A DNA stretch of 64,000 bases from NCBI GenBank assembly GCA_010909165.1, contig MU008159.1, forward strand, positions 1,116,001 to 1,180,000, written 5' to 3'. Made by a program: the position numbers and the translations under genes. Shown here piece after piece: positions 5,881 to 64,000 of this stretch (the first letter of the stretch is position 1; each line of letters begins with the position of its first letter). The notes below the pieces were generated by a model. It searched no databases, was not told where the DNA came from, and saw nothing but the letters and a program-made list of their open reading frames with translations. This DNA comes from Anthoceros angustus. Taxonomy: Eukaryota; Plantae; Anthocerotophyta.

Positions 5881-6027
5881 TGCAGCGTCCGGTGTGTGTT
5901 GGCGTGATGCAGCGTCCGGTGCGTGTCGGCGTGATGCAGCGTCCGGTGTGTGTCGGCGTGATGTAGCGTCCGGTGTGTGTCGGCGTGATGCAGCGTCCGG
6001 TGTGTGTCGGCGTGATGCGGCGCCGGT
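5881..6027. repeat. 27-bp minisatellite (TGCAGCGTCCGGTGTGTGTCGGCGTGA), 5 copies plus a partial
   Basis: Direct tandem copies start at 5881, 5908, 5935, 5962 and 5989. Confidence 0.95.
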
Positions 6028-6239
6028 CTCTGTTAGCCATAACTATCGAGAGCCGAACGTTTGTGTGTTACAGCGATAACAATCGAGAGCAAAACAGACG
6101 TGAATAAAAGTGCAAAAGAGCTGACCTTATATGAAAATTTTGGCTTAGTTATATACATTGACTACCACACTACCTATTCATAATAATTTATCTTATTGGT
6201 CACTAGGTTAAATAGGTAAGTTTTAGTATATGAGCATTT

Positions 6240-6905
6240 GAGCCAATCAGTGTTATCAAATTATTGCCACTTACTATTAAAGCTTACAAGAATATCACAA
6301 GAACCAATCCCTTATACAGCTCTAGCCTTATTCTTATTCTATGAGCTTATGAGAGCATTACTAGATCTATCCCAACCAATATTACTAACTTGTTGTCACT
6401 TATTCTTCCTTCCTTCGAGCTTATGAGAGCATCACCTGAACTAGTTCCTTCTACAGATATGCCCATTTTGTTCTTCAAAGCCTGTAAAAGCATCACTAGA
6501 ACTAGCCTCTTCTGCAGTTCTAACCTTATTCTTAAAGCTTATGAGAGCACAACTAGAACTAGCCTCTTCTACAACTCTAACCTTATTCTTAAAGCTTATC
6601 AAAGCATCACTAGATCTATGCCAACCACTATTATCAAATTGTTGGCAATTATTCTTAAAGCTTAGAGCCTATGAGGCCAACTGAACCAGAACTAGCCTCT
6701 TATGCAATTGTAACCTTATTCTTAAAGCTTATGATAGCATTACTAGTCTATGCCAACCAATATTACCAAATTGTGGGCACTTATTCTTAAAGCCTGTAAG
6801 AGCATCACCAGAACCAACCTCTTTTGCAGCTCTAGCCCTTTTCTTATTATTAGAGCTTATGAGAGTATTGATACAACTAGCCTCCTGTGCAGCTCTAACC
6901 TTATT
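6240..6905. repeat. Degenerate 57-bp tandem array within the Copia gag 3' region
   Basis: TAACCTTATTCTTAAAGCTTATGAGAGC-type units recur, for example at 6521 and 6578 (spacing 57). They are interspersed with CTAGATCTATGCCAACCAATATT variants. Confidence 0.8.
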
Positions 6906-8047
6906 TTCAAAACATAAGAAATCATGTGATTCGTTAGAAGTAGCCCCTTCCGCAGCTGTAATAGAAATCTTATTGAACGAAAACTTAAAGCAATCACAAG
7001 AACGTGATAGTGCTTCAAAAATATAAAAAATCTGCATATCAAGGGATATCTCCTGACCAACTGTCTTTAAATCATAAATAATATGGCAAAACTCATCAAT
7101 AAACTTCTTAATTGATTGCAAATGAAACATCTGAAATTGAACAAGCCGCGAAAATTCAAACTCGAGACTCTGTCAATGTTCTAAACTTTGCCACTCAAAA
7201 GTAGGCTGTATAGTTGCCCAAACCCCAGCAACAAACTTCTTTTCAAATATCTAACTGATACAATGGTGAACCTACAATTTGGATCAAATATTGTAGGTTC
7301 ACAAATTTTGGCTGAACCTACAAATTTTATTTGTAGGTTCAGCCAAAAAACAAATATGATCAAATTGTATCAGTGCAAACCTAAATAATATCCTAAAACT
7401 TTAAGTGTTCAACCAACACTTGAAAAAACCTTAAAAACCAATCCTCCCAGAGCACACTTCTTAGACATATCACAAAATGCGGGATAGAAGACCTGGTAAA
7501 TCTCAAAAGGAGAATCCCCGTGCTATATATATATATTAGGCATACCCTACAAACCCTCCAAACCCTAGTATTCTAGAAACCTTCTCATTTAACACAACCA
7601 ACATAAAGTTTAAATGTATCTTAGAAACATTAGCATCCGATACCATGTTACAATATCTAAGTTAGTCTTAAGTAAATTCGAATCACAAAAAGAGATTTAT
7701 AGCAAGAGCAATAACAAATATCATAGTAAGCCACTAAGCTCGCAAGAAAGGATACAACGAACTTAATCTTTAGAGGTCTTTATAAAGTGGAGAGAGCTAC
7801 CCTAACTAGGAATCTAATTCTGCTTAGCATCGACTTGAAAACTATACAACATAGAACAATATCATGTAATTGTAAATATAGATCCTCATATAATAGAATG
7901 TATCTAGAGTACAAATCCCAGAATCATTGTATCATAAAGCCCTTCAGGCCCCATAAGCTTTGATGTAAACTGAGTTCTCGAATTTCATGGAACCGACTCA
8001 TACTCAGCCTTTCTAGACTAAGGTTGTAGTGTCTTATTAATATTACA
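6240..8047 (-). mobile_element. Truncated Ty1/Copia LTR retrotransposon (5' LTR, PBS, gag remnant)
   Basis: On the minus strand a TGTAAT...TGTAACA segment (8047-7646) is followed directly by TGGTATCGGATGC, resembling the tRNA-iMet PBS TGGTATCAGAGC. ORF 7130-6729 (FIDEFCHIIYDLKTVGQEISLDMQIFYIFEALSRS) resembles the Copia gag (Retrotran_gag_2/UBN2) core. No pol is seen. Confidence 0.7.
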
Positions 8048-9989
8048 AGAGCAAAGTGTCTTCTCATCCCTTTCATCTGAAGAATATGTACATACTATCA
8101 ATCTAACTCGTTTTTAGCAACTTAGATTTTGGATGACAAATGTGCACTAACTCATTTTTAGCAATCTAGATTTTGAACAACAAATGTGCTATGTTGTACT
8201 CTTATAGTTTTTTTTTTCCAATCCTATATAAAAACACAAATAAGAAGTACAAATAGTATGCATAACAAAAAGAATATTTACTTAAATATCAACCCTACAT
8301 TCAAAAACAATTTTATGTAACAAGAAAAAAACAAAGCCAATTCTGTAATTTACGAGGTATTGTGAAAAGTTGTTCTCGCTTTTGGGTAAAGCAAACACAT
8401 CCCTTCACTTTGTTCTCTCTTTAGGGTAAAGCAAACACATCCCTTTACTAATACATCACAAATCTACGACACGGCCCGGCATCGCTGTTCAAGCTTTCTC
8501 ATCACTTTGTAAAGTAGTCTTGTACTACCTAACTTGGGATCTTTAATGATGATGCAGCTAGGCGGTTGGCAAGAGCTCTTCGGTCTTGATCTTCAGGCAC
8601 AGCTAGCACAAGGAGGAATAGGTGCATGAGAATGCAACTACCCAATGCAACTAATGCTCACACATGTGCCAATTTGACAACACCACTTGTAAACCAAACA
8701 CTCCTTCCAACGAGCTCATTGGTAGAAGATATGTATGAGGCAGGGAGATGAGAAAACTTCACACATTGATAAAACGTGATGAGAGGCTTCAACTCACACC
8801 AACGTGAGGAAGAAGAGCTGGCTAGTACTCTCCTCTTGACCAACATTCGCAACCCCTGGTTTTATGGTGCAGCTTCAGTGGGAGCATCATGGCTTGCTTG
8901 GATCACGAGGCTGATCCCTCCCATCAATCTTATCTTTCCTGAAAATCCCATATCATGAGGCGCACCAGTTGTATCGGGAGGAAGAAGAATCCTTTCCACG
9001 GAAAGAGAAAAATTCTTTCCGTTGTCCTCGTAGGTTTTTGAGACGACCTCAACTTGGAGTATCCTTCAATAGGAATAATAAAAGTACATTTGTAAAATGC
9101 TTACAATTCAGGGGAGAAATATTGCGTGTACAGGCGCCTCCCCCTATTCGATGTTCTGGCGGACTGCAGCGCACTTCTTCTGAAATAACTGCGTAGTGGG
9201 AGAACCTATTTCCGAAGGGGTGCTCCGCAACCTGTAATGTGTTGTGAAGAACAGGGGAGATGGCTTCTACCTTTCAAACGCACAAATTACAAACCCCAGG
9301 CCTGCGGAGGGTCCGGATGACTCACAGGAGGACGGGAAGAGCCACTGCGGAGTGTGCCGAGCAGCCATTTGTCTCCAGTTCTCAACCCGAATCCGTCAGC
9401 CAGGCCTCCGGATTCCACAATTCGCAACGCCCGCGAGCACCACAACCGTCCGGAGCACATACATCAAAGCGAACATCGTTGCTACGAGGGCAGGGAAGCT
9501 CCAGGCGGAAACACCTTGTAAGGAGCTGGGCAAGGGGGAAGAAAGCCAGGATAAGCAACCTGAGAGGAGCAGAGAAAGGAGCAAATCGTGTAGCATAGGA
9601 ACCTTGAAAATGCTAACAGGCTCCATAGCTCAACGCGAAGGCAGGGACGTCACGAGAGGCTAGTTCCTACCTCTGTCTCTGCCTCGGAGCGTGATAAGAC
9701 CAGGAGAGCGGATAAGCAGCCACATGTGGCCACCAACCAGGTCCATGTGTTCCAACCATTTGTTTGTGCGGAAGTGGTGAATAATCAAGCGCCATGGGCA
9801 GGCAACCTGCAACTTGCCTCTAATTCACCACCTCGTGTTCCCCGCCAGGGAACGCAGTGTGTCCCAAGCATATTTACACCTGACTGTAATTTTCCAGTAT
9901 GTTTGAGTAAAGAGAGCCGGTGGGAAACCCTAATCAGGGACACGGTTCCTCAGGCACACGCAAGCCAGCCATCAGTCCGTTCGATGCCG

Positions 9990-17939: not shown

Positions 17940-19090
17940 TCACCGGCGGCGGATACTGCGGGAGAGCCCAGGGTCCGAGGGACACTCAACCGCCATGTGC
18001 CCTCGACCACCACAGTTGTTACACACAACAACCTGCAGGCAATCCTTGCTCTTGTGGCCGGGGAGCTTGCAGTTCCGGCACACAATATCCACAAAAGCAG
18101 GCACAGCTGCTCCTCTTGTTGCACTGCCAAGTCTTGGGCAGTCACGGGCTATATGCCCAGCCTGGCTACACCCATTGCATACTGGGCTGTTAATGCAGTC
18201 TCGTGCCAGATGACCAGACTGGCGGCAGTTGTTACAAGCCTTCTCATTGGGACAATCCACTGAAACATGGCCAGGTCTGTAGCAGTTGTTGCAGAGCCTT
18301 GACTTTGGTAACCCTACTTCTTGGGCCGCACATCCTTTTGCAATGTGACCTGGCTTTCCACATACGTTGCACACAGGCTCATTATGGCATTCACTCGCAA
18401 TATGTCCAGGCTTCTTACAATTTCGGCACAGCGGCTCAGTGGGGCATGCTGCAGCAATATGCCTGTGGGACAACGCAATAGACAATCAGCACATGCAATG
18501 CCAAACTAATGAATGTAAGCAACAGACATCTACCTGCCCACTGCAAATCAGAGTCAAAAGGACGTAGTTCTACCCAGACAAACCACAGTTGTTGCAGACT
18601 GCTGCATTTGGGCAGTCCCTGGCGAAATGTCCAGACCTCCTGCAGTTGTTGCAGAGCTCCACAAGCGGCCTGCATAAAAGGAGAACCATGAGAGGAAGCC
18701 CGTGAGCGTCTGAGAGAAACAGAGGGCATGCAGGAGCCTTGGTAATGCTTGGAATCCTATGGAACCTATTCAACTTTTCACAAACCAACACAGCTGGAAC
18801 AATAACACACAACTAGTAGCATGCTAATGATAAAATATGCAGATCACAACATCGCAAGTCCAACAACAACGAGGTGTGCAAGTTAAACGGTACCTTCCAT
18901 TAGACCGAGGAAAACCACCACCGCCACCCCCACCACTACCACTTTTCTCCCTCGGAAACATCTTGTAAGGGGTACTCCGACGAAAGGCCCGTTTGCTGAC
19001 AATTCCACTTTGGATGCGACGACCAGAGCCTCGGGTCAGGTCATCCAGGCTCATACCGAGCTTAGCCTGAGTATCCAGGACAACCGACAT
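17940..19090 (-). CDS. GIS2/CNBP-like protein with 9 CCHC zinc knuckles and an ALY-like N-terminus; GC-rich copy
   Basis: Exons 19090-18894, 18669-18574 and 18462-17940 join in frame via GT-AG. There are nine CX2CX4HX4C knuckles. The N-terminus is MSVVLDTQAKLGMSLDDL...RRSTPY. A long 5' UTR intron is likely at about 20353-19113. Confidence 0.93.
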
Positions 19091-20701
19091 CCAGCCTGCT
19101 CTATAGAGGCACCTTAAATAAGTTATCAGGTGACGTGCCCTGCGTTAACCCTGATGGAATGCTTTATCCCAGAGAGGTAGAACGGTTGAATACGTCCTGA
19201 CTAAAGATTCATCCAAACTGTGCACAGCTGTCAAGTTTCTCCTCCCTTCTTCCTCCAAACCCAACAAGGCACGTCACCTCCACCTCCTTCTTCAGCCCTT
19301 CACCCTCCTCCGCTCTCCTCCTCCGTTCTCCCACAACCGATTCTCTAAGAACTACAGCAAATCCCTTTACACAGAATGGTGACTCCAACATTATGACCCA
19401 AGACATGTGTGTACTACAGTCATTCAGAAAAAGTACGCAGTAAAATGGCGCAGCCACACTTGAGAAATGGAAACGACCTACTACAGGCAACACAAGGCTA
19501 CCAACATCAGTTATAACCACATCTGCAGTGCCAGCTGCCATTCCGGCATGCAACCTAGTTTTTCACGACAAAATATATGTTAACAGCAACTCCTACATGA
19601 GGAAAGCAAAGAGTCATCCTATCTGCAAGTGCTGCAGATAGAAATACGCACCTAGATCTTGAACGAAGCGTGCACGCGGCCTATGTGAGGCACAAGGGCT
19701 ATTTCACCTGCAAAGACTTGAGCCCAGCAACCAGTCAGTATCGCAGCCAGAGCGGACCAATATACGACACTGCACGAGGGGACAAGGTCTAGCGGTGGCA
19801 TCAGGTACAGCAGGAAGCACGGAGTAGGAACATCAATCTAGCCAAGGACCTCAAATCCCCACTAACACCCAAGACACGTAAGTCAACACGATTACATGTG
19901 TCCCAGAGCTGGACATCAAAAACATCGGACTGAGCTCCGCATTCCGTCAAAAGCACGGATAACATAGAACCAAGAAACTAACCACGTTGAAGACAGTAAA
20001 GGAACAGATTCCAAATCCAAAGGCTGAGAGGAGGTGGAAATAGGGCAGACACAAGCTGCTAAGCATCAGTTCCCGCTAAGAAATAACGAGCTGGATAGCG
20101 ATAGGATAGTAGGAGATGGAAACCATTCACATTCCAACAGAGAATCAAGGAGTGGGTGGGGGGTGGCGAGGGGAGGGGGTGGCGATGCACAGAACCCTAG
20201 GTCGCGCAAGAGTGTACCATCCCAACAAGAGTCAAATGCGGCATCATTCGAGAGGACAACGGGAAGGGATAAGCCCCAAAGGTAGGGAGAGGAGATGGCT
20301 CTGGAGCACCAAGTAGAAGTAAGACAAAGCGGAGCACTCCAAGGTATGGAATACCTTACAAGTTAGGCACCCCAGCGTTGGAGCTGAGAGTCAGCAACAG
20401 CAGGTCTCACAAGGGAAGCGCTCGATTCCGCGAGCTGAACACCGCAAACTCCAAAGCGCTGAATCTCGCAGCTGATACCCCCGACGCCGCCGGGCCACTC
20501 CCTGACTGCGTACCAACACAAACCACACGGAAGACTAGGTAGGTTGTTTTTATTGCAGGAATTCCGTTCACATACAGACACAGGTATGTAGGTATAGGTA
20601 CCCAATTTTTAAATTGAGCTGGTGAGTTCTTAAATTACTATTTTTCCAAAAAGTGGTGCACTGCTGACTGTTCCGTTATCGAGAGCTGGGGCTGGCCTAT
20701 C

Positions 20702-22859: not shown

Positions 22860-23937
22860 TCAACGTCGCATTCCTCGTGCTAACATAGGGTCTGAGGGAC
22901 ATTCTACTGCCATATGACCTCGACCTCCACAATTGTTGCATATAACAACTTGCAAGCAATCCTTACTTTTGTGCCCAGGAAGTTTGCAATTTCGACAAAC
23001 GATATCAGCAAACCCTGACACAATTGGTCCTCTTGGTGCGTTAATATTTGGGCAATCTCGAGCAATATGTCCAGTTTGACTGCATCCATTACAAACTGGA
23101 TCATTTGTACAATCACGTGCCAAATGTCCAGGTTGACGGCAATTGTTACAGGCTTTCTCATTAGGGCAATCCATTGATACATGCCCAGGTCGATAACAAT
23201 TATTACAAAGCCTTGATTTTGGTAATCCCATTTCTTGGGATGCACACCCTTTTGCAATATGACCTGATTTTCCACACATATTGCATACTGGTTCATTGTG
23301 GCATTCACTTGCAATGTGCCCCGGCTTCTTACAGTTTCTACATAGGGGCTCCGTTGGGCATACTGCTGCAATGTGTCTAGAAGAGTAGATGCAAATGCAC
23401 AATTTAGTATGAGTCAATAGATATATATAATTATATAATACATTTTAATAATAAAAAATAATATGTAAATAAAATTTGTAAGACCATACCCCGAGACACC
23501 ACAGTTATTGCATACTGCAGCGTTAGGGCAATCTCTTGCAAAATGACCGGTTCGTCGACAATTGTTACATAGTTCTAAAAGGGGTCTACAAGACATGATA
23601 AATGAGTTAGTAGAAAACCAACAAAAGGAAATAATCATGGAGATCTTGAAAACATGAAATTGAATTAAAAAAGAGAGAAAAACAATAATTATGTTCCATT
23701 TATTCAAGTTGTAAGCATGATGTCTAAAATTTTTTTGTGGTATAAAGGGCATGGATACCTGGAAGATCTATTGAAGCCACCGCCTGTCTTCTCTCTTGAA
23801 AATATTTTGTAGGGTGCACTTCGTCTAGAACCTCGTTTACTTACTACACCACTTTGCATTCGACGATTGGAGCCTCGAGAAGCAAGATCGTCGAGACTCA
23901 TGGTAAGCTTTGCCTGTGTGTTTAGGACATCCGACAT
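22860..23937 (-). CDS. GIS2/CNBP-like protein with 9 CCHC zinc knuckles and an ALY-like N-terminus; AT-rich paralog
   Basis: Exons 23937-23759, 23585-23490 and 23376-22860 have the same intron positions and phases as 17940-19090. The ORF is intact. The N-terminus is MSDVLNTQAKLTMSLDDL...RRSAPY. Confidence 0.92.
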
Positions 23938-29546: not shown

Positions 29547-32500
29547 TTTCAGGCTGCCCACCATCAACCAGGCCGTGGGGAATCGGGCGCGCTGTGTACT
29601 ACCAACTCCTTGGCACCAATGTCGTTATATACCTATCCAAGCTACACAGCCTGACAATGGCCTAAAAAGGTACATTTATTGTTTTCTTTGCCAGCAAAGG
29701 AAAGTAGAGAAAAGCTGCCAAAAGTAAAGCTAGAATCATGTCATGTAAAGAGGCTAGAAAAAGCAAACTACGTAGGGATGTCGGTGTATGTATGTAATTT
29801 TTTAGGGAGGTAGGTGTATGTATGTATTTGATGACCACACTCGAGGGAGGTTGCCGCGCCCAGGTAGAGACGATGTTTACCAGAGTAAATATGCCCAACC
29901 GGGCTGAGAGATTGTGAAAGGATGGTTCCCCATCCCAGAGTAAATGTGGCCAACCGGCTGAAAGAATGGTTCCCATCCGAGCATTGATTTCGCAGGTTGT
30001 TTAACTGTGGAGTTCTTACACATTCACCACATCGGTAGGATGACAATGGGGTGCATATACACCAAATGTGAGATGGATAGGTAGGGTAGAAAGATTATCA
30101 TACACACACTCTCTTATGGTTATGGGCAAGGTTGCACGCCTCTCGGACGTGTGGAGTGTGAGAGCTTGCTTTCCGGCTTGTGTTAACTGGCCACCAACAC
30201 CGCACGTCTCACCAGTCCTGGTTTCACATGTGTCAACTCTTTGCGTGGTCTAAAAAGCAAGAAGCTGCAAGCTGCCCGCAAACTGTGGAGTGGATTGGCC
30301 ATAACTCAGTGGTGTAGTCACGACTGTGCTATCTTCAATCGACAATTTTTTCTGTCTCCGAGCGTCCTGACAGGATTTTGAAGATTGCAGCAATTACTGC
30401 ATAATTCTGCAACGAAATGTCCAAAGGAAGTACCAGACAGGCTAACAAGAAATTTAACCCTCTCTGGACCAGGAGCTCCAACGCTTCAACAGCCTCGCGC
30501 ACCGCTCCATTCTCCAGAGCAAGGTGGCACCCATAGTAGACTTGAATCTGGACTGCAAGCCACCTGGCCAGCTGCTCATCCACCCACTCAGGCTTGTAGA
30601 AATTAGGGCTGCGATTTCGAGGTCCTCTGCAGGCCTGAAGTCAGGATATTGGGGGCTTAAGCTTTTGGCATCCGCTCTGTACGTAGTCCCACCACTTCCA
30701 GGGGTCCTAGGCCTCACACATCCACGTCGCTCTCACAAAGCTTCATAAAACTGGAAGCAGGCTGTGAGGATGATGGGCACTTACACCGCTCCGTCATCCC
30801 ATTATATAGGCAAGCTCCTACCTAACCCACCATCGCCATCATCTTGGAATAATGTATATCCACAAGATGCAAAAACAAAATTATTACCGTATATGTATAT
30901 GCACCACATTAGATATTAAAGTCATTAAGCATTATTCCAAATTGAAGTAGCAAGCGACACTCATGGGAGTCGAAGAAATCCTAATTCAGTTTTCTGAATC
31001 ATTAATTCAGATATCCTCTACACCCAAGTCTTTCTCTTGATACCTAGAGTAGGTACTTTTAAAAATAATATTTTATTTTACAGTAGGCGCTTAAGTTCAA
31101 GTTTTTTGGATAACGTCTCGCTGCCGGGGTGGTAGATAGGCGCGAGAGCACGCTTGTAGCATATGATTGGATGAACCCGCATGTCACGTAGTGCGCGCTA
31201 CCATATGCTTGGCAGCAAATCCACCACTCACTGTTCTGCGGAACCTCATCCACCACAGGTTTGTGCGAGTGACGAGAAATCTTCAGCGTGTCCTGGAAAT
31301 CAGATTCCACCCTGATATTTGGCGGGCTGACAAAGCTTTTCACCTTGGTGCAATGTTAGCTCAACTACCAGCGTGGCCAGCTCTCCGAATCCACGGGGAA
31401 CTTCAATTCTCAGCCCATAATTCCATTATGGACACCCTGAAGGAGGGGATAGGCGCGCCTCCAACCTACAACATGCTAACACTACGCATGATCTGCATTC
31501 AGGAATTTCAGGTCACACGGGCTCGGGCCGACGGCAAGTACAGCCAGTAGTAGCCAGTATACGCAACCTTCACGACACACGCACACTCTTCCGGCATCGC
31601 ACCAATTGACCATTGTGCACAACGTCGAGTTCGATTCCGATCAAAATGCCTGTGTCGAGCTCACGAGTCAGGGAGGTGCGCTTCCACGAGAATGCCTGCA
31701 GTGGACAGTCATCGTCAGAAAGCGAAGCACACGTACCAGCACCCAAGAGACTGAACGCGCGAGGAAAATACGAGCCGGGATATCAATGAGCATTGCGCGG
31801 GGGGAGGCCGTTTGTGTCTTTCACCGATCCTCTTGATCACCAATTCCAGACTACTTTTATTGGTACCTAGTTGCGCTGAACACTTTTATCTGCTGCAAAT
31901 ATACCAACTCACAACATAATGTTCTGCAAATATAATACGTACCATAGATTTAATTTTGTGGAGGAAAGACCTCGGCTAAAAGTCCTAGTTTTAGATTTTG
32001 TATACTCTATACAAAGAATAATAGAGGAGGCCTTCTAGTTTTGGGCTCTTGATTTGTTCCCTATCACCTCGTGTAGATGCGACTTCCCTATTTCTACATA
32101 TTTATGAAGTTTCTTCTTCGATGAAAAGATAGGCTTCGTTTTTTGGACATAAGCCATGAGCATAGCTAATCTTGGATTTAAATTAAATCTAAAATACAGT
32201 TAGTTCATAGTTCGGCTTGGTTAGCTTTACGATGAAAGGTTCTCCTAATTAGTTCATTCGGGTTACTAATTTTTATCTTTACACTTTAGGATCTAAAATT
32301 CATAAATAAGGATGTCCACCAGTTTCACGCCATATGATTGAAAATATAGAAATAGGTTAATGGAACACGTGCAATTACTCTAAAGTACTTTTCAGACATA
32401 GACCCATCAAGGAGGTCGTTTGATTAATTATAGCTAGGAGTTGAGCACACATATTTGTATTTCCAAAACCGCCCCATGACATTAACAATAGCGCAATAAT

Positions 32501-32661
32501 CATGAACATGAAGTGGAGCAATCAAATTCTTTCTTTCCAAAATGACCTTGACAATCCTAGGCTTTGAAGGCGAATCAACTTGAAGTTCCCACCGTCTTAG
32601 TGTGCAACAATGGTCTTCAGTTGGGAACATAATGGCATCTAGGCTGGTGGTGAGACTGATT

Positions 32662-32833
32662 GGAAAAGAACAGATCAAGGCTTTGCTCTATTGAGTCTTT
32701 ACTGACCGTACGCTGAGTGCGGTGGAAAAGAACAGATCAAGGCTTTGCTCTATTGAGTCTTTACTTTTCGAATTACACGACAGTGCAGTGGAAAAGAACA
32801 GCATCCAAGGCTTTGCTCTATTGAGTCTTTACT
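32662..32833. repeat. Three near-tandem copies of a ~42-bp unit (GGAAAAGAACAGATCAAGGCTTTGCTCTATTGAGTCTTTACT)
   Basis: Copies at ~32662, ~32724 and ~32790 are separated by short, partly related spacers. Confidence 0.9.
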
Positions 32834-33094
32834 TTCGACCAGAATTGCAACATAGGGTGTGTGAGCAATATGCTTGCCTGCCGCATAAATCTCTAGGTCA
32901 ATTGTTGTGCTGGCTCACTGAACTGTGATCAGTCTTGAGTGCGGGCGCCCAATTCTGTTGCTCGAGCCTCGAGGGATACTTCACATCGTCAAGGATGGGT
33001 CCAATTTTGTCACATGACGAGAAACTCATACCTCCTCCATTTGAATGTGTGAGCTAACATCGTGAAGGATGGGGAAAATTGTGTCGGCGGAGGA

Positions 33095-33218
33095 GAACCT
33101 AATACCTCGTCCGTTAGAAGAAGAAGAACCTAATACCTCGTCTGTTAGAAGAAGAAGAACCTAATACCTCGTCCGTTAGAAGAAGAAGAACCTAATACCT
33201 CGTCCGTTAGAAGAAGAA
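33095..33218. repeat. 31-bp minisatellite x4 (GAACCTAATACCTCGTCCGTTAGAAGAAGAA)
   Basis: Four near-perfect tandem copies. Confidence 0.95.
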
Positions 33219-33294
33219 GCTTATTGAATGAAGTCCACTAAGGACGGAAATTTTTCGTCATGGGACTTGGTACTTAACAAGTAGGATCCCAAGT

Positions 33295-33425
33295 AAGTAC
33301 CAACTAGGATCGATCCCAGGAAAGTACCAACTAGGATCGATCCTAGGTAAGTACCAACTAGGATCGATCCTAGGTAAGTACCAACTAGGATCGATCCCAG
33401 GTAAGTACCAACTAGGATCCCAGGA
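33295..33425. repeat. 27-bp minisatellite x4.5 with a palindromic core (AAGTACCAACTAGGATCGATCCTAGGT)
   Basis: Tandem copies start at 33295, 33322, 33349, 33376 and 33403. The core CTAGGATCGATCCTAG is a perfect 16-bp palindrome in two copies. Confidence 0.93.
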
Positions 33426-33630
33426 GAAACAGATCCCTCATCCGTTAGGATATGTGAATAGACAACCGTATACTCAAGTAATGTCAGGTGAAATATTAAA
33501 GTATCATATAATGATAATATTTTATATTTATTATAGATGGTGAATCATTTTAAAGTATTTAGGTTATTTTTTGAAATGCTTGTATTAATGAGAGGAGAGA
33601 CAGTTTCTTGATTGTTTGTGATGTAATGTT

Positions 33631-33969
33631 TGTAATATTAAAAATAAAAATAGTAATATATAAGGAGTTAGAGTATAAGATTATACCATAATTGAAGTTT
33701 GCATAAGTGAAGGATCGTGTGGCAGCACATGATGGTGGAAAGAGGAGAGGAGAGGAGGAGGCAAGTGTAACTCTCTCATATTGAGATGAGGCTTGGAGGG
33801 TATTTATACCCTCCAATAGGGCTCCCTAGGAAGCTCCACAAGAAGCCCCTAGGAAGGAGCACAAGAAGCTTCCTAGTGATTAGCTTCAGCTAAACTAATG
33901 ATAGTTAACTGACACCTAACTTAGACTAAGTGTATTAGTCTAAGTACATTGGGCTTTAATACCCTTACA
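33631..33969 (-). mobile_element. Possible solo LTR
   Basis: TGTAA...TTACA termini and an internal GGGTATAAATACCC TATA motif followed by a CT-rich tract on the minus strand. No matching target-site duplication was found. Confidence 0.4.
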
Positions 33970-34574
33970 ATAAGTTATCTTAAATATTAAAGGAAGATTA
34001 TTTTTCTAATCCCGTTATTGAAGAAGAAGAAAGATTTGAAGTACTCATATGATTCTTGTTCTTACACTAGTGTTATATTATGATTCCATAGTCTTCATAT
34101 TTGTGAGCTATATATGTTCCTTACAAAAAAGAAACGTGCACACTTTATGTAAAAAAAGAGATGAAATATCACATCTACCACGAAAAGCAGATTCCGGCTT
34201 CTTGCCTGCCTTTCGTGGCTTTCTGTGTCTGCCTATTGTAGCTCTTGTGAATCTTAGGGTAGTTTACTGCCCTATCTAATGCTTATGCTTCTCGTGTTGG
34301 ACATGTTTTGTAGTTCTTACTTACATAATTTTTATTTTTCTCTAAAAAATATATTCATATTTCTTACGTAGTTTAACACTTTCCTAGGAGAAGAATACGA
34401 GGTAGATTGAAAGCTTCTTAGTTAAGAATCTCTCTTTAGCCTACAGCCTCTCCCAACCTTGGCTGGTCGAGAAGCTAGAACATAAATACCGCACCGTAAA
34501 CACCATTCACCATTGGCTGGTCAGGAAGGGTATATACACATATCTGACTTGAAGAAAGGTAGTAAGACTTCGCG

Positions 34575-34822
34575 GTATGTGGAGCGGTGCGTGCGCAGTG
34601 TGCGATGTACGGAGCGTTGTGGTGTGCAGTGTGCGGAGCAATGCGGTACGGTGTGCGGTGTGTGGTGTGCGGTGTGCGCTGTGCGGTGTGCGCTGTGCGC
34701 TGTGCGCTGTGCGGTGTGCGTTGCGGTGTGTGGTGTGCGGATCGGTGCGGTGTGTAGTGTGCGGAGCGTTGCGGTATATGATGTGTGGTGTGCGGAGCGG
34801 TGCGGTGCGGTGTGCAGTGCCA
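34575..34822. repeat. Low-complexity (TGCGG/TGTGCGC) simple repeat tract
   Basis: About 250 bp of degenerate GTGTGCGGT/TGTGCGC units. Confidence 0.9.
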
Positions 34823-35026
34823 CTGGTCATGTCCTAGGGGTTCAAGGCTTGCTTTGTGGTGGCCTATGTGGCTCTATTGCGTTGAACATGGGGTGCTAAG
34901 GTTGATATTGCGGTGAGCATGGGGTTGAGGAGGTCGCGGTGAGGACATGATTTAGGGTTTTTGGTGCGGCAGCCGTGGTGTGGAGGAGGTCGTGGTTATT
35001 TTTATTTTTGTTGATTTTTTGAGGTT

Positions 35027-36324
35027 ATGGCTTCCAGGTCGCTAAGCGTAAAACAGTTAAATATGTAGACAACAAGGTATCAATATTGCAGACTATATTA
35101 CGTAGTATTGAGGACAAATATGAAGCTAACAGCGTATCTATATTGGAGACTAGAGTACGTAATATTGAAGCGGAGAATATTTCCTTTAAGGAAAAATATG
35201 AGTCTCTTTTGGCTAAGCACCAATCTTTGGCATCGGACTCGGAGGACGAGGGAGATGAGTTCAATTCCGTAATGGATGATCTTATCGATAAGAGATTTAA
35301 TAGTCATGATGTTATCATTAGAAAATTGCAACAAGATCTTGAATGAGCAAGCTCATGGACTAAAGATTTTGAGGCGGCTTTCTAGGTCAAGTTTGACTCA
35401 TTGCTTTTGCAAGTCAATGCCTTGCAAATTCATGTTCCTTGTGTGGGTTGCTTGTTGAAGGCAGATCTAGTACCTAGTTTGGAAGGCTACAAGAAGGTTA
35501 TTCTTGAGCTGATTCGTGCATAGAGGGAAGAAATGCAGTGTGAGTTGCTTGTGGAAGGCAGATCTGGTATCTAGTTTGGAAGGCTACAAGAAGGTTCTTC
35601 TCGAGCTTATTCATGCACAGAGGGAAGAAATGCATAGTTATATGGCCAAAAAGTTGCAGGGTTTAGACGATCAGGTTGGAAGACTCTCAGAAAGGTTGGT
35701 GCAGCAAGGGTTACAAAATGACGTTTTTTCACGAACTATAGAGGAGAAATCCATAAATTGGAAAATCATTTCACTTCAACGGAACAAGTTTTACCTATAT
35801 ATTTGGAGAAGCTTATAAGTAAAAACCTCGTGGGGGTTAATGATCCCCCTGCTCCTTCTTATCCTGATGGCAACAGAGTATCGGAAGTTGTTTCTGAGAT
35901 GGTGGGCCGTGTTCACCGTGCTTTGAACTTGAGAATTTCTGGTCTTGGTAATGACATCGTTGCACCACTTGTGGCTGCAAAGGAGTTTTTTAATAGGCTA
36001 GAGGTTGATGTGGTCATTCTTCAAGCCTTCTGCCTTGGAAAAGATCCTGGTAGGGAGTGCATATTGATTATGACTCTTCACTCTAGGGATGATTGCCTCC
36101 AGGATATGAAGACTAGGTCTATGTTAAGGACAACTCAGTTATATATCAATGAGGATCTTAGACCATTGCAATGGAAGACTAAGAAGGAGAAGTTACCCGC
36201 TTTTAGAGCTGCTCGTGCTGTAGGTCAAGTGGCTTTCTTTCGTGGGGATGAGCTGGTCGTGTTTAGCTCTCGTTCACGCATTTTCATTGACACTGTTATT
36301 TCTTTCGTGGGGATGAATTGGTAG
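35027..36324 (+). mobile_element. Degenerate non-LTR retrotransposon ORF1 (coiled coil + RRM + CTD), no ORF2
   Basis: Coiled-coil remnants (ILETRVRNIEAENISFKEKY), then RALNLRISGL ... QAFCLGKD..RECILIMTL ... LRTTQLYINEDL ... GQVAFFRGDELVV, matching the LINE ORF1p RRM/CTD pattern. It has stops, frameshifts and an internal ~95-bp duplication (~35447-35635). Confidence 0.72.
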
Positions 36325-36796
36325 TGTTTAGCCCTCGTTCACGCATTTTCATTGACACTGTTGATTGATTGAAGATTATTTATCTTATTTAAATTTTACC
36401 TTTACATTCGTCCAGACCATTTTACCGTACTATAGTTGTCATATTTCGACCATTTTACCGTACTATAGTTGTCATATTTCAGTCACATGACGAAAATCGA
36501 AAATCCATCCTTAGTGCACTTAAATATCTTCTTCTTCTTCTTTTTCTTCTTTAAGTCCTTAGTGCACTTAAATATTTCTTCTTCTTCTTCTATAAAGTGG
36601 GGCTTTATTGAAACGAAGCCTCTTTGTAAAGAAACAAGGAGAACTTGAAAAATGTTGAAAAATGTTACTGTCACGGTGAACTCAGAGGAAGAAGACCGTA
36701 TCTAACCCTATGGGTCCTTATCATTATACAAGGAGAGCCTATTTTACCCGGAAACCTTTGGACCTTAACCCCCCATCACTACAAACACGACGGGTA

Positions 36797-57898: not shown

Positions 57899-58644
57899 AT
57901 GTATGGCACTAAAATCTTCAAAGCATTCGTCATCGTCAAAATCCGGGTCCTTCAAGAGGAGAGATGATTCCACCTCATCCCACAACTCTTCAACGCCATG
58001 TCTGACATGAGTGTGGTATACCCTCAGAGAATATTAATATGCGCTCCGAGAATATTAATGTCTCTTTGCGGTGATGTCTTCTGTACTAACGCGTGGAGGT
58101 CACCAGCCCTCTTGTCTGATCATTTTTTTGGACTTCTGATCCACGATTAGGACTGCTGATGCTTGGAGCAGAATCAGAAATATGGAGCAGGGCAGACTCC
58201 TCAGTCCCAATGCTGGACAAGTTCACTGGTCATTTGCCGAAGAAGCACGGAAGCACGGAAAAGGAGGACAGTCAGCCCTGCTCCCCTTCGAACGGGGAAA
58301 CGTCACACGTATGTGAAAAATACACTCGAATTGGCCACACAGGTTTGCGTGAATCTTGCCACCAGTCAGCCCAACGTCGATGGACTCAAGTCTCGGATGG
58401 TCGGCAGATAATGAAACGGAACTGAGCCAGTCAAACATATTTGACTCCAGGCTTCAAGCTAAAGTGATGAATATAATGGATGTTTCTTGTGGGGGAGGGG
58501 AGCGAAAGATCAAGATAAGCTCTCTGTCAAAGAGATTTTGTCAGATGGAGGCTTAGGCAAGGTGCGAAGTGCAAGAGAAGCTCTCTTTGTCGGAGTGGTT
58601 TGCCTATGAGTTTCGGAGTACATGACAAATAGGTCTCAGGCACG

Positions 58645-58775
58645 TTCTCAATTTTGTAGAGGCATTAGAGGCACCGGAGGGATTCTTAGGGTTCTCAATT
58701 TTGTAGAGGCACTGGAGGGATTCTTAGGGTTCTCAATTTTGTAGAGGCATTAGAAGCACTGAAGGGATTCTTAGG
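58645..58775. repeat. Tandem repeat x3 (TTCTCAATTTTGTAGAGGCA...GGGATTCTTAGG), unit ~38-48 bp
   Basis: Three copies; the middle one is internally deleted. Confidence 0.85.
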
Positions 58776-58794
58776 TACCAACTTGAGATAAGCA

Positions 58795-59430
58795 TGTTTG
58801 ATGAGCCATCTGAGAAGAGAATGCTTAATGAACCATTTATTCTGATATGAGAATATTTGATATGGCTCATCAAACATTCTGACATGAGAATATTTGATGA
58901 GAATATTTGATGAGCCATATAAGGAGGAGGGTGTATGCTACGATGTTTGATGAGCCATACAAGGAGGAGGGTGGCGATGTTTGATGAGCCATACAAGGAG
59001 GATGAGCCATACAAGGAGGATGAGCCATACAAGGAGGAGGGTGGTGATGTTTGATGAGCCATACAAGGAGGAGGGTGGTGATGTTTGATGAGCCATACAA
59101 GGAGGAGGGTGTCTGCTGCGATTCCGACTATGAGCCATACAAGGAGGAGGGTATCCGACTATGAGCCATACAAGGAGGAGGTATTTGCTGCAATTCCGAC
59201 TATAAGCCATACAAGGAGGAGGGTATTTGCTGCAATTCCGACTATAAGCCATACAAGGAGGAGGGTGTCTGCTGCGTGCGATTCCGACTATAATGGCTAC
59301 GCAATATCAAAGAGAAGAAACAAATATCTTTTGCGATTCTGATTATAAGCCATACGAGGAGGAGAGTGTCTGCTGCGATTCCGACTATAATGGCTACGCA
59401 ATATCAAAGAGAAGGAACAAATATCTTTTT
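58795..59430. repeat. Composite minisatellite built on a GAGCCATACAAGGAGGAGG core
   Basis: More than 10 core copies with changing flanks: GATGTTTGAT at the left end, GCTGCGATTCCGACTAT at the right end. Confidence 0.9.
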
Positions 59431-61066
59431 CCTCGCATCGAGGCACTTGTAATCTAGAAGAGAATATGCCTTCTTATATCTTTAAACACAGCCTTCCAAT
59501 TATACGTATTTTACAATGTATTGTAAAATAAGAAGTGAAAGGCAAGAGATAAGTGCTACCGAGAAGGATTTGTAGGATATATCATTATAACATATTATAA
59601 TATATATGAAATCATCAAATCTTTCATTAGAGTGTAGATTAAAAATATATAGAAGAAATATAATATAGATAAAATCCATCATGTCATGTGAAAGTCTAAT
59701 TTTGAATAAATTCGATAATATAAGGTTCAACATCTTCCCATTTTGCTATGGGTGTGCCAAACTCTGTGTCATTCCTATATTGAAGGATATTTCTTCCTTA
59801 ACATAATAATCATAATCATCATTATTTGGTGGATAGTCTCACTTGATAGGGAACTTGGTCCTAAGTAGGTATGATTACTGATTTTCAAGTACATTTAATT
59901 GCATAGTTATCATTTCTTCATGTATATTCTTCTTCATCGTCTCTTCATGTCTATTCCCACCAAAGTCTCTACTAGGCTGCACATAGGTAGTGATATGGGT
60001 TAATCAAATATGTTTTCCTATGTGGTTTGATTGAACCTATGGGACTTGAGTCAAGGACTTTTAATAAATTTATAAGTCTTGTGCCAAAGCCGATCATGCT
60101 CATAGGCATGGTGCGAGGCTTTCTCTTTCATACTTCATGACATCCTTTCAGTGCTCAATGTGTGTCCATGGACCTCTAAAGTTCCCTCCAAGGTTGATTT
60201 GCTTAAAGAATTGATTTGAGTCGGTCACGTATGTGCATTGCTTTCTAAGCTTGGTCCACTTAAATAAAAAAAACTAGTGATAAAGTCCACTTAAATAATT
60301 GAATTAAGTCGATTTTGGATTGAAAAACCAAACATGAATAGGATCCTCATCCTAGTAGCGATATGTGCCTCATGAATTGAATTGAGTTGATTTTCAAGTG
60401 TAACACTAAACATGAGTAGGATCCTCATCCCGATAGTGATCCCTCTTAAGGGGCTTAACTGTGGGGTTCTAATCGGCTCATGTTTGACCATAGGATTTAA
60501 CAAACATATGCCCGTGTGAGAGAGTTATTACTTAGGTCATGAATAGCTTGAAACTTGTTAGGAAACTACAAGTTTGCTAGGAAGCTAAAGGCTTGCTATA
60601 CTATCAAGTACATATGGTTTGAATTGAAGCTACCATTGTCTTAAACATAATGCATGCTTAGTAACTGTACTAGTGAAATAAGATAAAAAGGTGAAAAATT
60701 AAAAGAGGTAAAAAACACTAGTTAGTAGCTGCCTAGTTAAGGCCAAAATAAGGGCTAGAGCAAGGGCTTTGAGAATTCATCATCATTTGAGCTCATGGTG
60801 TGCTACAAGCTTTGTGTTGAGATTGCTGTGGAGAGCCTAGCTAGTGAGCTTGTCGTTGAGTCAAGGCCAATACTACCATACGGTGTAGATAACTAGACTT
60901 AAGTGTGTATTTCTACGAATAAAGAGTACAACCTCCTCGCAATAGCCAGTTTGGAGTAGATAGCTAGACTCAAGTGTGTATTGGTCAAACGGTCACCTTA
61001 AATCAAAACCGGTGTAGTTTATGAAACAAAACTTTTGTAGATCTTATGCAATATACTTTCAGAAAA

Positions 61067-64000
61067 ATGATAGAAGTACAAACAATAGTAAGATACTTGA
61101 AAGAGAATCCATTGAATTATTCAATGTCTCTTACGGAATTCAGGTATGTAAATATGTATGTGATTCTTGAGGTTTCAAAATTTATGAAACTTACTGAACA
61201 ATCTTTGATATGACCTCTTGCAGCCAAAAAACGCCCGAGGAATTGCGAGAAATACTATGCAATGTGCTCAGCATAATTCAATCAAACCAGGTAATATAAA
61301 AAATATTCATATTCAAGATAAAATTTTATGTCGATGTGTAGCTCAATATTTATCTTGATTTTTCAGAAATTAAATTTAGATTTATGTAAAGAAGAAACAA
61401 CAACAGAATGGATAGTAGAATTTCTCCAAATTCTTAATTATCAACCTCCTCATGATAGGTATAAAATATTCAGTATCTTTGTAACTCATAAAATATTTGA
61501 GGGTTATAGATGTCGTGCTTTACAAAAATATACTTTTCGGTGCAGCATTCCATATAGACAAGGGCTTGCATATGGTAGCCCAGAAGTGATTTACCCATTA
61601 CTGTCTTGGATGCTTCCACAAGTATGACAATTACAACTTAAATAATGGTTTGTCTATTTAAGTTACAAAAAATCTAGAGTACAGTATATCCATAAGATTA
61701 TGATAAGATCTAAACATATATATTTGTAATGCAGATTAACAAGTTGAAAAAACGTGTTTACTTAGCACGGTTTTTAGTAGATATGGATATCCCAACTGAA
61801 TATCTTTTGGAAGAAGATATTAATGTCCTACATACTGAATATAATACACTACGAGAGCATTTTAAAAGTCAGCATTGTTATTTAGAAAACCTTGGACAAA
61901 TGGAAGAAGATCCATCTGAATTCAAAAAGCTTTTGCAAAATCTACAAGCAGAACGTGATCACCTTGATTCTAAGGCTTTAAAAATCAGAGCAAAGCTTCA
62001 GGTATAGTTCCATGTTCACTAAATTATATAACTGAATAGTTAGCGTAAAAAAATTGTATTAAACTTTGACATATGGATGTCCAATCGCAGTTATGATTGC
62101 CCCTTGTTTCCAGCGCAAGTTCGAAGATGATGAGAAGCTTGATTCATTGTTGCAATCTATTTCATTGCTCACATTCTATTCAAAGGAAGAAGAGGACTTA
62201 AGTAAATCTTTACTAGAAGAAGAAAGGAAGATGGAGGGAATTTCAGGTAAAATATTATTTTTATGTCTCATATTTGGTGATATATTGTGATATACTCTTA
62301 AAAATTAAAATATTTTCATTCATCAGACCGTCCTCCAAAACTTGCAAAACATCTCAAAGACCTTGAGGCGTTTAGCTCTCTATCAACAGACGGAGTTATA
62401 GAGATATTGGCTAAAGACATAGAGGCTCTTCGATTTTCTCATCAAAGATTGAAAGTGGTAAGAGAATATATATTTCATATGACATATGTTAATAAAATGA
62501 CTTCCTTTATGTAATTTTGTAGAAACTTACCCCATAATTTTGCCTTAATATAGGATATACAAGAGAAACGTGCACAGCTAAAACCTATTGAAGATATTGA
62601 AAAGGATAACTCAAAGTTATCACACAATCCTCTCTATGTTCCGGTATGTGTTAAGATGAAGATGAAATTTTATTAAAACATAAAATTTATTAATCCTCTC
62701 ATTTAATATTTGATAAAGAAAACATAATATTTGTTACTAAGTAGGAATGCAAGTTAATATACCTATTATGCATGTGTGTAGACTAAATTATTTGCAACAC
62801 ATGAGAACATTCAATTATCAAACATTAATCAAACTGGGTATTGCAAAGATCAACCCAAGCAAAAGAAAAATGCATTAAATTGGCAAAATGATCAAATAGG
62901 TGCAATAGTTACACATAAGTTGCAATCAGCTCATAAAAATCTTGCAACATTGATTGCTACCAAAGAAAGCTTTGAAAAGGAGTTTGAACAAAGTACTAGT
63001 TCTATAAGAGAGGTGATATATGTTATAAATTATTGCATAGATGTTGATCATTCACATATATGAGTTCCATATATAAGAGAACAAAGAGTTACAGGTATTC
63101 TTTGTTATAGGTACAAGTAACAATACGTAGAGGGAAAGATTTGAAGGATTATGTTGATACTTTGCGAAACAAAGGCATTTTATACAAAGAAATGAAGACC
63201 AAAATTGATGATCTGACAATTGAGCATGGCCTCTTGTTTAGATCATTGCAAATATTGGAAAGAGAAGCTAGAAACTTACGAATGGGTATGACAACTTAAG
63301 TGGATGTACACTTTTCTATTTGATTTGAAAGATTGTATCTAAACAATGGACTTCATGAAAATGTCAACAGAAAATAATGGAAGTCGATCGGAGTCCATAG
63401 ATTTATTCAAGTCTATATCAGAAGTTTCTACAATAATCAAATTTTGTCAAGATCGTTTAGCACCCAAAATGAATATGTTACAAAAATTACAATTACTATT
63501 AAGACAAAGACACATTGAACAAGTTTCAACAGTTCATGCTCAAAAAGAGCTTTCACTTGCGGCCGAAAGGTATTTGAATTTCAAGAACTTTGAAAAAGAG
63601 GTTAACTTACTATTATATATCAAAGTTTAAGGAAAAAATTATTGTACACTCTTAGATATAAATATTCGTGTATATATGTAGGAAACATACACAAGCTGAA
63701 ACAGAAGTGTCAATGAGACATAAAGAGCTTAACAAAGAGAAACAAGTTTACCAAGAGTTATGCTCAAATGTCAAATGTCTTCAAATGTGTATTGAAGACT
63801 GTAAGAATCTAGCTTGTTCGAATTGATTTTAGATCATCGTAGCATGAATCTATGAGTTCCTGTTGACCGAAATCTTATTTTCCATATTCTGCAGTAGAAA
63901 AAATAAAAATAGGGACAAACTCCAATATATTACGACAAACACAATTGCAACAACACGAGGAGTTGGCTTGTAACTTATATCGAAGGCAACAAAATTTACA
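61067..64000 (+). CDS. IFT81: Intraflagellar transport protein 81 (IFT-B), multi-exon, 3' end beyond the window
   Basis: MIEVQTIVRYLKENPLNYSMSLTEF, FLQILNYQPP, YRQGLAYGSPEVIYPLLSWML and KLKKRVYLARFLVDMDIPTEYL match the IFT81 CH domain and following coiled coil. A later exon gives RGKDLKDYVDTLRNKGILYKEMKTKIDDLTIEHGLLFRSLQIL. Exons and introns are AT-rich. Confidence 0.9.

What the first reader, a model, noticed from the sequence alone, without database searches (positions are those of the whole stretch)
61067..64000. Flagellar IFT81 sits in an AT-rich, repeat-flanked island like the AT-rich zinc-knuckle copy: a possible sperm-gene compartment
Seen: the housekeeping and signalling genes here appear to be about 50-55% GC, whereas IFT81 exons and introns appear close to 30% (by eye), and IFT81 is preceded by minisatellites and TE-like DNA. 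Established: in land plants IFT genes are needed only to build sperm flagella. Inference: genes used only in spermatogenesis may be held in TE-like silenced chromatin in vegetative cells and drift to AT. Low GC3 would then flag male-germline genes, and the AT-rich knuckle gene (22860-23937) is predicted to be the antheridium/sperm-specific paralog.
Basis: partly seen in the sequence, partly recalled or inferred. Interest (0 to 1): 0.8.

Follow-up and report, generated by a model that had tools for sequence, protein, structure and literature searches.

The report
Intact sperm-tail gene with junk-DNA composition
A working gene for building sperm tails (IFT81) in a hornwort-like plant has the same A/T-rich, methylation-worn DNA as dead transposons nearby. 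A distant relative has the same gene-sized patch, so base composition may reveal which genes are kept shut in the plant body.

Summary
Window 61067-64000 (+) is the first 13 GT-AG exons of IFT81, cut by the window end. Exons are 34% GC, introns 26% and GC3 27%, against about 46-55% GC (GC3 49-57%) for the other genes measured. Minisatellites lie at 58666-59429. Nothing shows that the 1.6 kb spacer upstream is TE-derived.

The gene is intact and the A/T bias is mutational, because introns and silent sites match. Every AT-rich patch here, IFT81 and TE relics alike, is depleted in CAG/CTG and CpG. That is the footprint expected from CG/CHG methylation, so long-term TE-type silencing is the best reading (confidence 0.5).

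A second land plant (Logan contig L001, about 55% protein identity) has an AT island that starts and ends with IFT81. Selaginella, Sphagnum and Calypogeia show no comparable island.

The "compartment" idea is not supported: the island is gene-sized with normal flanks in L001. Whether low GC3 marks sperm genes, and whether the AT-rich knuckle copy is sperm-specific, could not be tested.

The scan reached a similar reading on 17940-23937 of this window (s1-706989). Unchecked notes place SSNA1 and DNALI1, but also non-flagellar genes, in AT islands. I found no published description.

The parts
61067..64000 (+). IFT81 gene, first 13 exons, cut by the window end. Exons: 61067-61143, 61224-61290, 61367-61458, 61546-61621, 61735-62001, 62114-62246, 62327-62457, 62554-62643, 62782-63012, 63111-63285, 63371-63569, 63682-63800, 63913-64000.
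   Evidence: frames, GT-AG, phases; Pfam IFT81_CH on exons 3-5; PDB IFT81; colinear with L001 and liverwort or moss IFT81. Exon 8, the 5' third of exon 9 and the start of exon 13 rest only on open frame plus splice sites.
59430..61066 (.). AT-rich non-coding spacer upstream of IFT81 (GC 0.35). It is the most CAG/CTG-depleted stretch of the window (11 seen, 42.6 expected).
   Evidence: No TE features found.
58666..59429 (.). Minisatellite block: 38-bp unit at 58666-58749 and nested 13- to 114-bp units at 58884-59429. GC 0.39-0.51; it lies at the edge of the island.
22863..23937 (-). AT-rich zinc-knuckle paralogue (comparison case). It is 86% identical in protein to the GC-normal copy, and 95 of 128 differences are at third codon positions.
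17943..19144 (-). GC-normal zinc-knuckle paralogue (reference copy for the substitution spectrum).
6000..9000 (.). AT-rich island holding a copia-type gag relic (6732-7172, minus strand). TE comparator with the same composition and CAG/CTG depletion.
32000..36500 (.). AT-rich island with unassigned reading frames (35086-36324). A feature search gives FP/ORF1-like leads only. Comparator.

Best explanation
This is the functional IFT81 gene of a hornwort-like land plant. IFT81 is a core IFT-B subunit that carries tubulin into growing flagella, and in land plants it is needed only in spermatids (established knowledge). Its whole transcription unit, and little else, has relaxed to the base composition of dead transposons. 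The likeliest cause is that the gene body is kept, generation after generation, in TE-type closed chromatin with CG and CHG cytosine methylation in the cell lineages that pass on DNA. Methylated cytosines deaminate to thymine, and closed chromatin probably also misses GC-biased repair. Silent sites and introns therefore drift to about 26-27% GC, and even the protein shifts toward amino acids with A/T-rich codons, while purifying selection keeps the frame, the splice sites and the CH domain. Shown here: gene identity and integrity, the composition, the CpG and CAG/CTG depletion, the gene-sized extent in a second species, and absence of a comparable island in three other land plants. Inferred: methylation and chromatin state, silence in the thallus, expression in antheridia.
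For: Identity and integrity. The chance of 575 stop-free codons at this composition is about 1e-22. Mutational, not translational: intron GC 0.26 is close to GC3 0.274, and upstream DNA is 0.35. Protein shift: FYMINK 0.289 and GARP 0.141, against 0.22-0.25 and 0.17-0.19 in the named land-plant orthologues. Methylation-type footprint: against a first-order Markov expectation, CAG+CTG o/e is 0.33-0.80 in every AT-rich 1.5-kb bin and 0.90-1.22 in all GC-normal bins but one. Spearman rho of GC against CWG o/e is 0.60 (p 2e-5), and against CpG o/e 0.65 (p 4e-6). The island 59430-64000 has 51 CWG against 102.9 expected (P 1e-8). The control trinucleotide GAC+GTC shows no consistent depletion in the islands. 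Second species: in L001 the GC falls from 0.48 to 0.35-0.39 at the start codon (2042) and rises to 0.54 near 5900-6000. The window's exons 1-7 and 9-13 match it in the same order. CpG o/e is 0.30 inside against 0.68 and 0.52 outside, and CWG o/e 0.74 (P 0.002) against 0.98. The paralogue pair shows 70 GC-to-AT transitions against 19 in the reverse direction. Literature: in A. agrestis 14.3% of genes, about 40% of them not overlapping TEs, carry H3K9me1/H3K27me1 plus CG/CHG methylation and are silent in thallus (PMC10952607). In the moss P. patens, genes with differentially methylated positions are enriched for cilium terms (bioRxiv 10.1101/728691).
Against: No methylome, chromatin or expression data could be consulted for this locus. 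In the knuckle paralogue comparison, C-to-T rates differ little by context: CG 0.23, CHG 0.30, CHH 0.21 (CHG against CHH, p 0.09). CAG/CTG are favoured codons in GC-rich coding DNA, which may inflate the contrast, although presumably non-coding GC-normal stretches mostly give o/e 0.93-1.02 (one gave 0.72). IFT81 introns alone give CWG o/e 1.10 on the simpler base-frequency expectation (small sample that includes acceptor CAGs). The taxon of L001 is unknown. The 3' edge of the island in the window is unseen.
Confidence: 0.5

Rival explanations
1. The composition has relaxed only because GC-biased gene conversion is missing. The gene lies in chromatin that never recombines, so it falls to the A/T-rich mutational equilibrium, with no special role for cytosine methylation.
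For: C-to-T rates are similar in CG, CHG and CHH contexts between the knuckle paralogues. Intron GC of 0.26 is the kind of value expected from mutation bias alone (my own knowledge). GC-normal genes need some force to hold them at 50-55%.
Against: It does not predict a depletion specific to CAG/CTG and CpG beyond dinucleotide expectation. It is not exclusive of the main explanation, since both follow from closed chromatin.
Confidence: 0.25
2. One reading: a regional sperm-gene compartment, in which male-germline genes are gathered in TE-rich silent blocks and low GC3 marks such genes specifically.
For: Minisatellites and AT-rich DNA precede the gene. Unchecked first-reader notes place SSNA1 and dynein light chain p28/DNALI1 in AT islands of the same genome.
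Against: In L001 the island is exactly gene-sized, with GC-normal flanks. In the window a GC-normal PPR gene ends 3.2 kb upstream. No second flagellar gene lies in this window. Unchecked notes also list LBD, PLATZ, haspin-like, Mid1-like and dCTPP1-like genes in AT islands.
Confidence: 0.1
3. Selection for A/T-rich codons or A/U-rich mRNA suited to translation or storage in spermatids.
For: GC3 is 0.27 in a gene presumably expressed only in spermatids.
Against: Introns (0.26) and upstream DNA are as A/T-rich as silent sites or more so. TE relics share the composition and the context depletion.
Confidence: 0.05
4. Artefact or dead gene: an assembly chimera or contaminant, a foreign gene, or a decaying pseudogene.
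For: There is a sharp composition break. No close relative was found among the public proteins.
Against: Three other AT islands lie inside the window with GC-normal DNA on both sides. An independent 6.4-kb contig shows both edges. Exon 5 falls inside the land-plant IFT81 group (support 97/97). 575 codons are open with 12 canonical introns.
Confidence: 0.03

Closest known systems
Anthoceros agrestis gene cluster P2 (Hisanaga et al. 2023, New Phytol, PMC10952607)
   Same: These are genes silent in thallus that carry TE-type marks: H3K9me1, H3K27me1 and high CG and CHG methylation. Some are clearly host genes switched on at another life stage.
   Different: That paper reports chromatin, not base composition. 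Searches of its text and held supplements found no hit for AT-rich, flagellar, dynein or intraflagellar terms; 'GC content' occurs once, about a contaminant contig, and 'sperm' twice, one being the Marchantia N4-methylation passage. Membership of this IFT81 in the class is predicted here, not shown.
CpG depletion of germline-methylated DNA (vertebrate CpG-poor tissue-specific promoters; bimodal CpG o/e in insects)
   Same: Sequence wear from 5mC deamination records which DNA is methylated in the germ line. It can be read from sequence alone.
   Different: Here the wear also affects the CAG/CTG (plant CHG) context. It lowers total GC by about 20 points over a whole gene body, with gene-sized sharp edges.
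Bimodal genic GC3 in grasses and other monocots (gBGC model; from my own knowledge)
   Same: Two compositional classes of genes exist in one plant genome, explained by a neutral process rather than by codon selection.
   Different: In grasses the unusual class is GC-rich with a 5'-3' gradient. Here the minority class is A/T-rich, flat along the gene, and shares its composition with TE relics.
Repeat-induced point mutation (RIP) in fungi
   Same: C-to-T decay makes A/T-rich islands. One member of a duplicated pair (the knuckle genes) is affected.
   Different: TpG+CpA is not depleted (o/e 1.2-1.3). IFT81 has no second copy in this window. The genes stay intact under selection. RIP is not known in plants.
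A/T-biased codon usage of genes on the non-recombining male (V/Y) chromosome of Marchantia (from my own knowledge, not checked here)
   Same: Male-reproductive genes with A/T-shifted silent sites in a bryophyte.
   Different: That is a chromosome-wide effect of no recombination. Here it is a 4-5 kb island among ordinary GC-rich genes.

Membership tests
IFT81 (IFT-B core subunit) | N-terminal calponin-homology domain (Pfam PF18383) | tested here: met
   Exons 3, 4 and 5 hit PF18383 colinearly at 13.2, 19.5 and 15.5 bits. Each is below the 27.4-bit cut-off because exons were searched singly. Exon 5 matches IFT81 chains 6IAN and 8BD7. Exons 1-5 align in order with the CH region of annotated IFT81 proteins.
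IFT81 (IFT-B core subunit) | Long C-terminal coiled coil colinear with known IFT81 | tested here: inconclusive
   Exons 9, 10 and 12 match residues 333-451 and 536-578 of liverwort or moss IFT81 in order. Coiled-coil propensity and IFT74 pairing were not tested. The last 60-80 residues lie beyond the window.
IFT81 (IFT-B core subunit) | Vertical land-plant orthologue rather than a foreign copy | tested here: met
   Exon 5 falls in the group holding liverworts, Sphagnum and Selaginella (97/97). There is no resolution inside that group.
TE-type methylated, thallus-silent host genes (A. agrestis cluster P2) | CG and CHG cytosine methylation with H3K9me1/H3K27me1 over the gene | not testable with these tools
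   Only the sequence footprint could be read: CpG o/e 0.46-0.53 and CWG o/e 0.66 in the gene, against about 0.63 and 1.0 in GC-normal DNA.
TE-type methylated, thallus-silent host genes (A. agrestis cluster P2) | No expression in vegetative gametophyte, expression at another stage | not testable with these tools
   No transcript of this gene, and no close relative of it, is in the protein collections searched.
TE-type methylated, thallus-silent host genes (A. agrestis cluster P2) | A host gene, not a TE coding region | tested here: met
   It is an IFT81 orthologue with introns in the same order as in L001.
RIP-like duplicate-targeted mutation | Loss of CpA/TpG with gain of TpA; action on duplicated DNA | tested here: not met
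   TG+CA o/e is 1.22-1.23 in the gene and 1.30 in the L001 island. IFT81 has no second copy in the window.
gBGC-type GC3 bimodality (grass type) | Two modes of genic GC3 genome-wide, tied to recombination | not testable with these tools
   Only one window is available. Within it, GC3 is 0.27 for IFT81 and for the AT-rich knuckle copy, against 0.49-0.57 for the five other frames measured.

The most novel reading that the evidence does not exclude
In hornworts a whole class of host genes used only at restricted stages, with the sperm-flagellum toolkit prominent among them, may have been held under transposon-type CG/CHG methylation for tens to hundreds of millions of years. Each such gene would then be a gene-sized A/T-rich island, and base composition alone would predict germline-silent, reproduction-specific genes. 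It would also explain why such genes are missed by annotation.
Probability: 0.35. Interest if true: 0.75.

Novelty: new variant of a known kind. Interest (0 to 1): 0.6.

Why it matters
If gene-sized A/T islands mark genes kept under transposon-type silencing, a hornwort genome sequence alone would give a list of candidate stage-specific genes. Sperm genes would be among them, in a lineage where antheridia are hard to sample.

It would also be a clear natural case of essential genes living long-term in heterochromatin-like DNA and paying for it in codons and amino acids.

There is a practical side. No hornwort IFT81 appears in very large protein collections, and several scan notes describe island genes as 'hidden'. 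Annotations may therefore systematically miss this class, which could bias claims of gene loss.

Tried and rejected
1. Reaching DNA beyond the window end through the neighbouring PPR gene failed. The exact protein is not on record, and a homology search found nothing at E<=1e-30.
2. Finding hornwort IFT81 by the word search failed. Exon 5 alone found nothing. A profile of liverwort IFT81 plus single exons as separate rows found only liverwort, moss and algal-type proteins.
3. The taxon of L001 could not be set. Its flanks carry no clear domain (one weak TAP42-like hit, E 0.024). An 89-residue tree does not resolve groups within land plants.
4. Contigs L002 and L006 hold further A/T-rich IFT81 pieces (GC 0.23-0.31) but no flanks, so they say nothing about islands.
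5. A DUO1-type MYB site recalled from memory (AACCGYY) is absent upstream in both species. Only a bare AACCG core is present.
6. No RNA family or tRNA lies in 57000-64000.
7. Eight literature searches found no paper on nuclear GC3 bimodality or A/T-rich genes in hornworts. The Anthoceros genome papers are not in the searchable library.
8. The supplements of PMC10952607 hold no flagellar gene names.
Exons were handled one by one, by reference.

Full report
WHAT IS THERE

On the plus strand from 61067 to the window end lies a gene of 13 exons. An ATG opens exon 1, all 12 introns are GT-AG, and 575 whole codons carry no stop. At the local composition a stop is expected every 12 codons, so an open frame of this length by chance has probability about 1e-22.

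Each exon was searched by reference.
- Exons 3, 4 and 5 hit Pfam IFT81_CH at consecutive profile positions 54-77, 84-104 and 108-123.
- Exon 5 matches solved IFT81 chains 6IAN (E 1e-7) and 8BD7 at residues 110-199.
- An exhaustive profile-free search with exon 5 returned 148 hits at E<=0.001; all of those later checked by name or Pfam were IFT81.
- Exons 1-6, 9 and 10 align in order with IFT81 of Calypogeia and Riccia. Exon 12 matches Sphagnum residues 536-578.
- About 60-80 residues of the C-terminus lie beyond the window.
- Exon 8, the first third of exon 9 and the start of exon 13 rest only on frame and splice sites.

COMPOSITION

IFT81 exons are 34.2% GC and introns 26.0%. GC at codon positions 1, 2 and 3 is 0.467, 0.284 and 0.274. 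Every 200-bp bin across the gene lies between 0.26 and 0.35, with no gradient.

The rest of the window is mostly 0.45-0.60 GC. Five other reading frames measured (two PPR genes, a HEAT-repeat gene and two others) have GC 0.46-0.55 and GC3 0.49-0.57 (the receptor-kinase frames look similar).

The 1.6 kb between them and the gene is A/T-rich, but nothing shows it is a transposon. No terminal inverted repeats or long reading frames turned up, and no copy lies elsewhere in the window. Its short reading frames were not scanned against Pfam.

IS THE A/T BIAS SELECTED OR MUTATIONAL?

Introns (0.26) and upstream DNA (0.35) are as A/T-rich as silent codon positions (0.274). Codon selection therefore cannot be the cause.

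The bias is strong enough to shift the protein. FYMINK residues make up 28.9% and GARP 14.1%, against 22-25% and 17-19% in liverwort, moss and Selaginella IFT81.

The neighbouring zinc-knuckle paralogues tell the same story. They are 86% identical in protein, and 95 of 128 nucleotide differences are at third positions. There are 70 G/C-to-A/T transitions in the AT copy against 19 the other way.

A FOOTPRINT OF CONTEXT-DEPENDENT DECAY

I compared CAG+CTG counts with a first-order Markov expectation in 1.5-kb bins along the window.
- All A/T-rich bins give o/e 0.33-0.80. These cover the copia-gag relic at 6-9 kb, the knuckle island, the 32-36 kb island and the IFT81 island.
- GC-normal bins give 0.90-1.22, apart from one at 0.76 in a repeat region (40.5-42 kb).
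- GC correlates with CWG o/e (rho 0.60, p 2e-5) and with CpG o/e (rho 0.65, p 4e-6).
- The island 59430-64000 has 51 CWG against 102.9 expected (P 1e-8). The gene alone has 40 against 60.7 (P 0.003).
- The control GAC+GTC, of the same composition, shows no consistent depletion in the islands.
- TpG+CpA is not depleted, so the pattern is not RIP-like.

CG and CWG are the contexts methylated on plant transposons. In Anthoceros agrestis, H3K9me1/H3K27me1 peaks carry high CG and CHG methylation, and 14.3% of genes share that state. These genes are silent in thallus, and about 40% of them do not overlap TEs (PMC10952607).

The footprint fits the idea that IFT81 belongs to that class. Three caveats apply:
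- CAG/CTG are favoured codons in GC-rich coding DNA, although three of four presumably non-coding GC-normal stretches give 0.93-1.02 and the fourth 0.72.
- In the paralogue comparison, C-to-T rates differ little by context: CG 0.23, CHG 0.30, CHH 0.21 (p 0.09 for CHG against CHH).
- No methylome was available.

A SECOND SPECIES

The best relative of exon 5 (60% identity) is a reading frame on a 6.4-kb Logan contig, L001. That contig matches the window's exons 1-7 and 9-13 in the same order.

Its GC is 0.46-0.50 up to position 2000. It drops to 0.33-0.40 from the start codon at 2042, stays at 0.26-0.40 through the gene, and returns to 0.52-0.54 after about 5900-6000. Inside the island CpG o/e is 0.30 and CWG o/e 0.74 (P 0.002). 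In the flanks they are 0.68 or 0.52 and 0.98.

The island is therefore coextensive with the gene and not a regional block. It also persists across about 45% protein divergence.

Two further fragments, L002 and L006, are 0.23-0.31 GC but have no flanks.

A tree of exon 5 puts the window, L001 and L002 inside land plants (97/97) but resolves nothing further. The species of L001 is unknown.

By contrast, IFT81 has ordinary composition in three annotated genomes:
- Selaginella: 0.48, neighbours 0.44-0.51.
- Sphagnum: 0.40, neighbouring gene 0.44.
- Calypogeia: 0.405, neighbours 0.48 and 0.52, so at most slightly lower.
The state is therefore lineage-specific, not a general land-plant rule.

INTERPRETATION

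The 'compartment' wording is not supported, because the unit is the single gene.

Three parts of the proposal could not be tested: the genome-wide claim, the expression claim, and the prediction for the A/T-rich knuckle gene. The genome beyond the window could not be reached, and no hornwort IFT81 is in the protein collections.

Earlier notes of this scan are unchecked and used only as leads. A follow-up on 17940-23937 of this window reached a similar 'methylation wear' reading. First readers placed SSNA1 and dynein light chain p28 in AT islands. They also placed LBD, PLATZ, haspin-like, Mid1-like and dCTPP1-like genes there. If those notes hold, low GC marks a wider class of restricted-use genes, with sperm genes as a subset.

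PRIOR KNOWLEDGE AND NOVELTY

Three related things are known: CpG loss in germline-methylated DNA, GC3 bimodality in grasses, and the P2 chromatin class in Anthoceros.

I found no paper describing gene-sized A/T islands over intact host genes in hornworts, nor a link to flagellar genes. The library lacks the Anthoceros genome papers, so this absence is weak evidence.

A moss study reports that genes with differentially methylated positions are enriched for cilium terms (bioRxiv 10.1101/728691). That points the same way.

I rate this a new variant of a known kind, with interest 0.6.

Noticed in passing
window 35086-36324 (+): Three consecutive reading frames in an AT island have no Pfam match. 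Feature-based look-alikes include baculovirus FP-type clusters, which may point to a retrotransposon ORF1 relic.
   Followed up: partly
window 6732-7172 (-): A weak copia-type gag match (Retrotran_gag_2, E 1e-4) lies inside the 6-9 kb AT island, next to degenerate tandem repeats of roughly 60-300 bp spacing at 6242-6925.
   Followed up: partly
window 61007 and L001 1988: Both IFT81 genes have an AACCG core 54-60 bp upstream of the ATG. It is the only such core in 2 kb upstream in the window. This could be chance or a MYB-type site.
   Followed up: no
window 55646-57895 (+): An intronless 750-residue reading frame that I took for a PPR gene by eye (not scanned against Pfam) has no relative at E<=1e-30 among the 8000 word-sharing candidates scored. 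Its exact sequence is not on record, so this genome and its close kin seem absent from the protein collection.
   Followed up: partly
L004 4020-6134 (-) and 10001-12495 (+): In Selaginella, IFT81 lies 3.9 kb from a 527-residue gene with two adenylate-kinase domains, a type known from flagella. A scan note (s1-384865) mentions double adenylate kinases in a putative sperm cluster of this genome.
   Followed up: no
whole protein collections: No full-length hornwort IFT81 exists among the billions of public predicted proteins searched. The nearest relatives are raw reading frames read through introns. Genes in AT islands may be systematically missed by gene prediction.
   Followed up: partly
window 42177-43154 (+/-): A GC-rich (0.60-0.67) internally repeated stretch has long open frames in several phases. 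Self-similarity between 42212-42795 and 42362-42907 is 73%.
   Followed up: no
window 24001-25400: The AT island of the knuckle paralogue runs 1.5 kb past the gene. It is the most CpG-poor (o/e 0.30) and CWG-poor (0.33) bin of the window. Its content is unknown.
   Followed up: no
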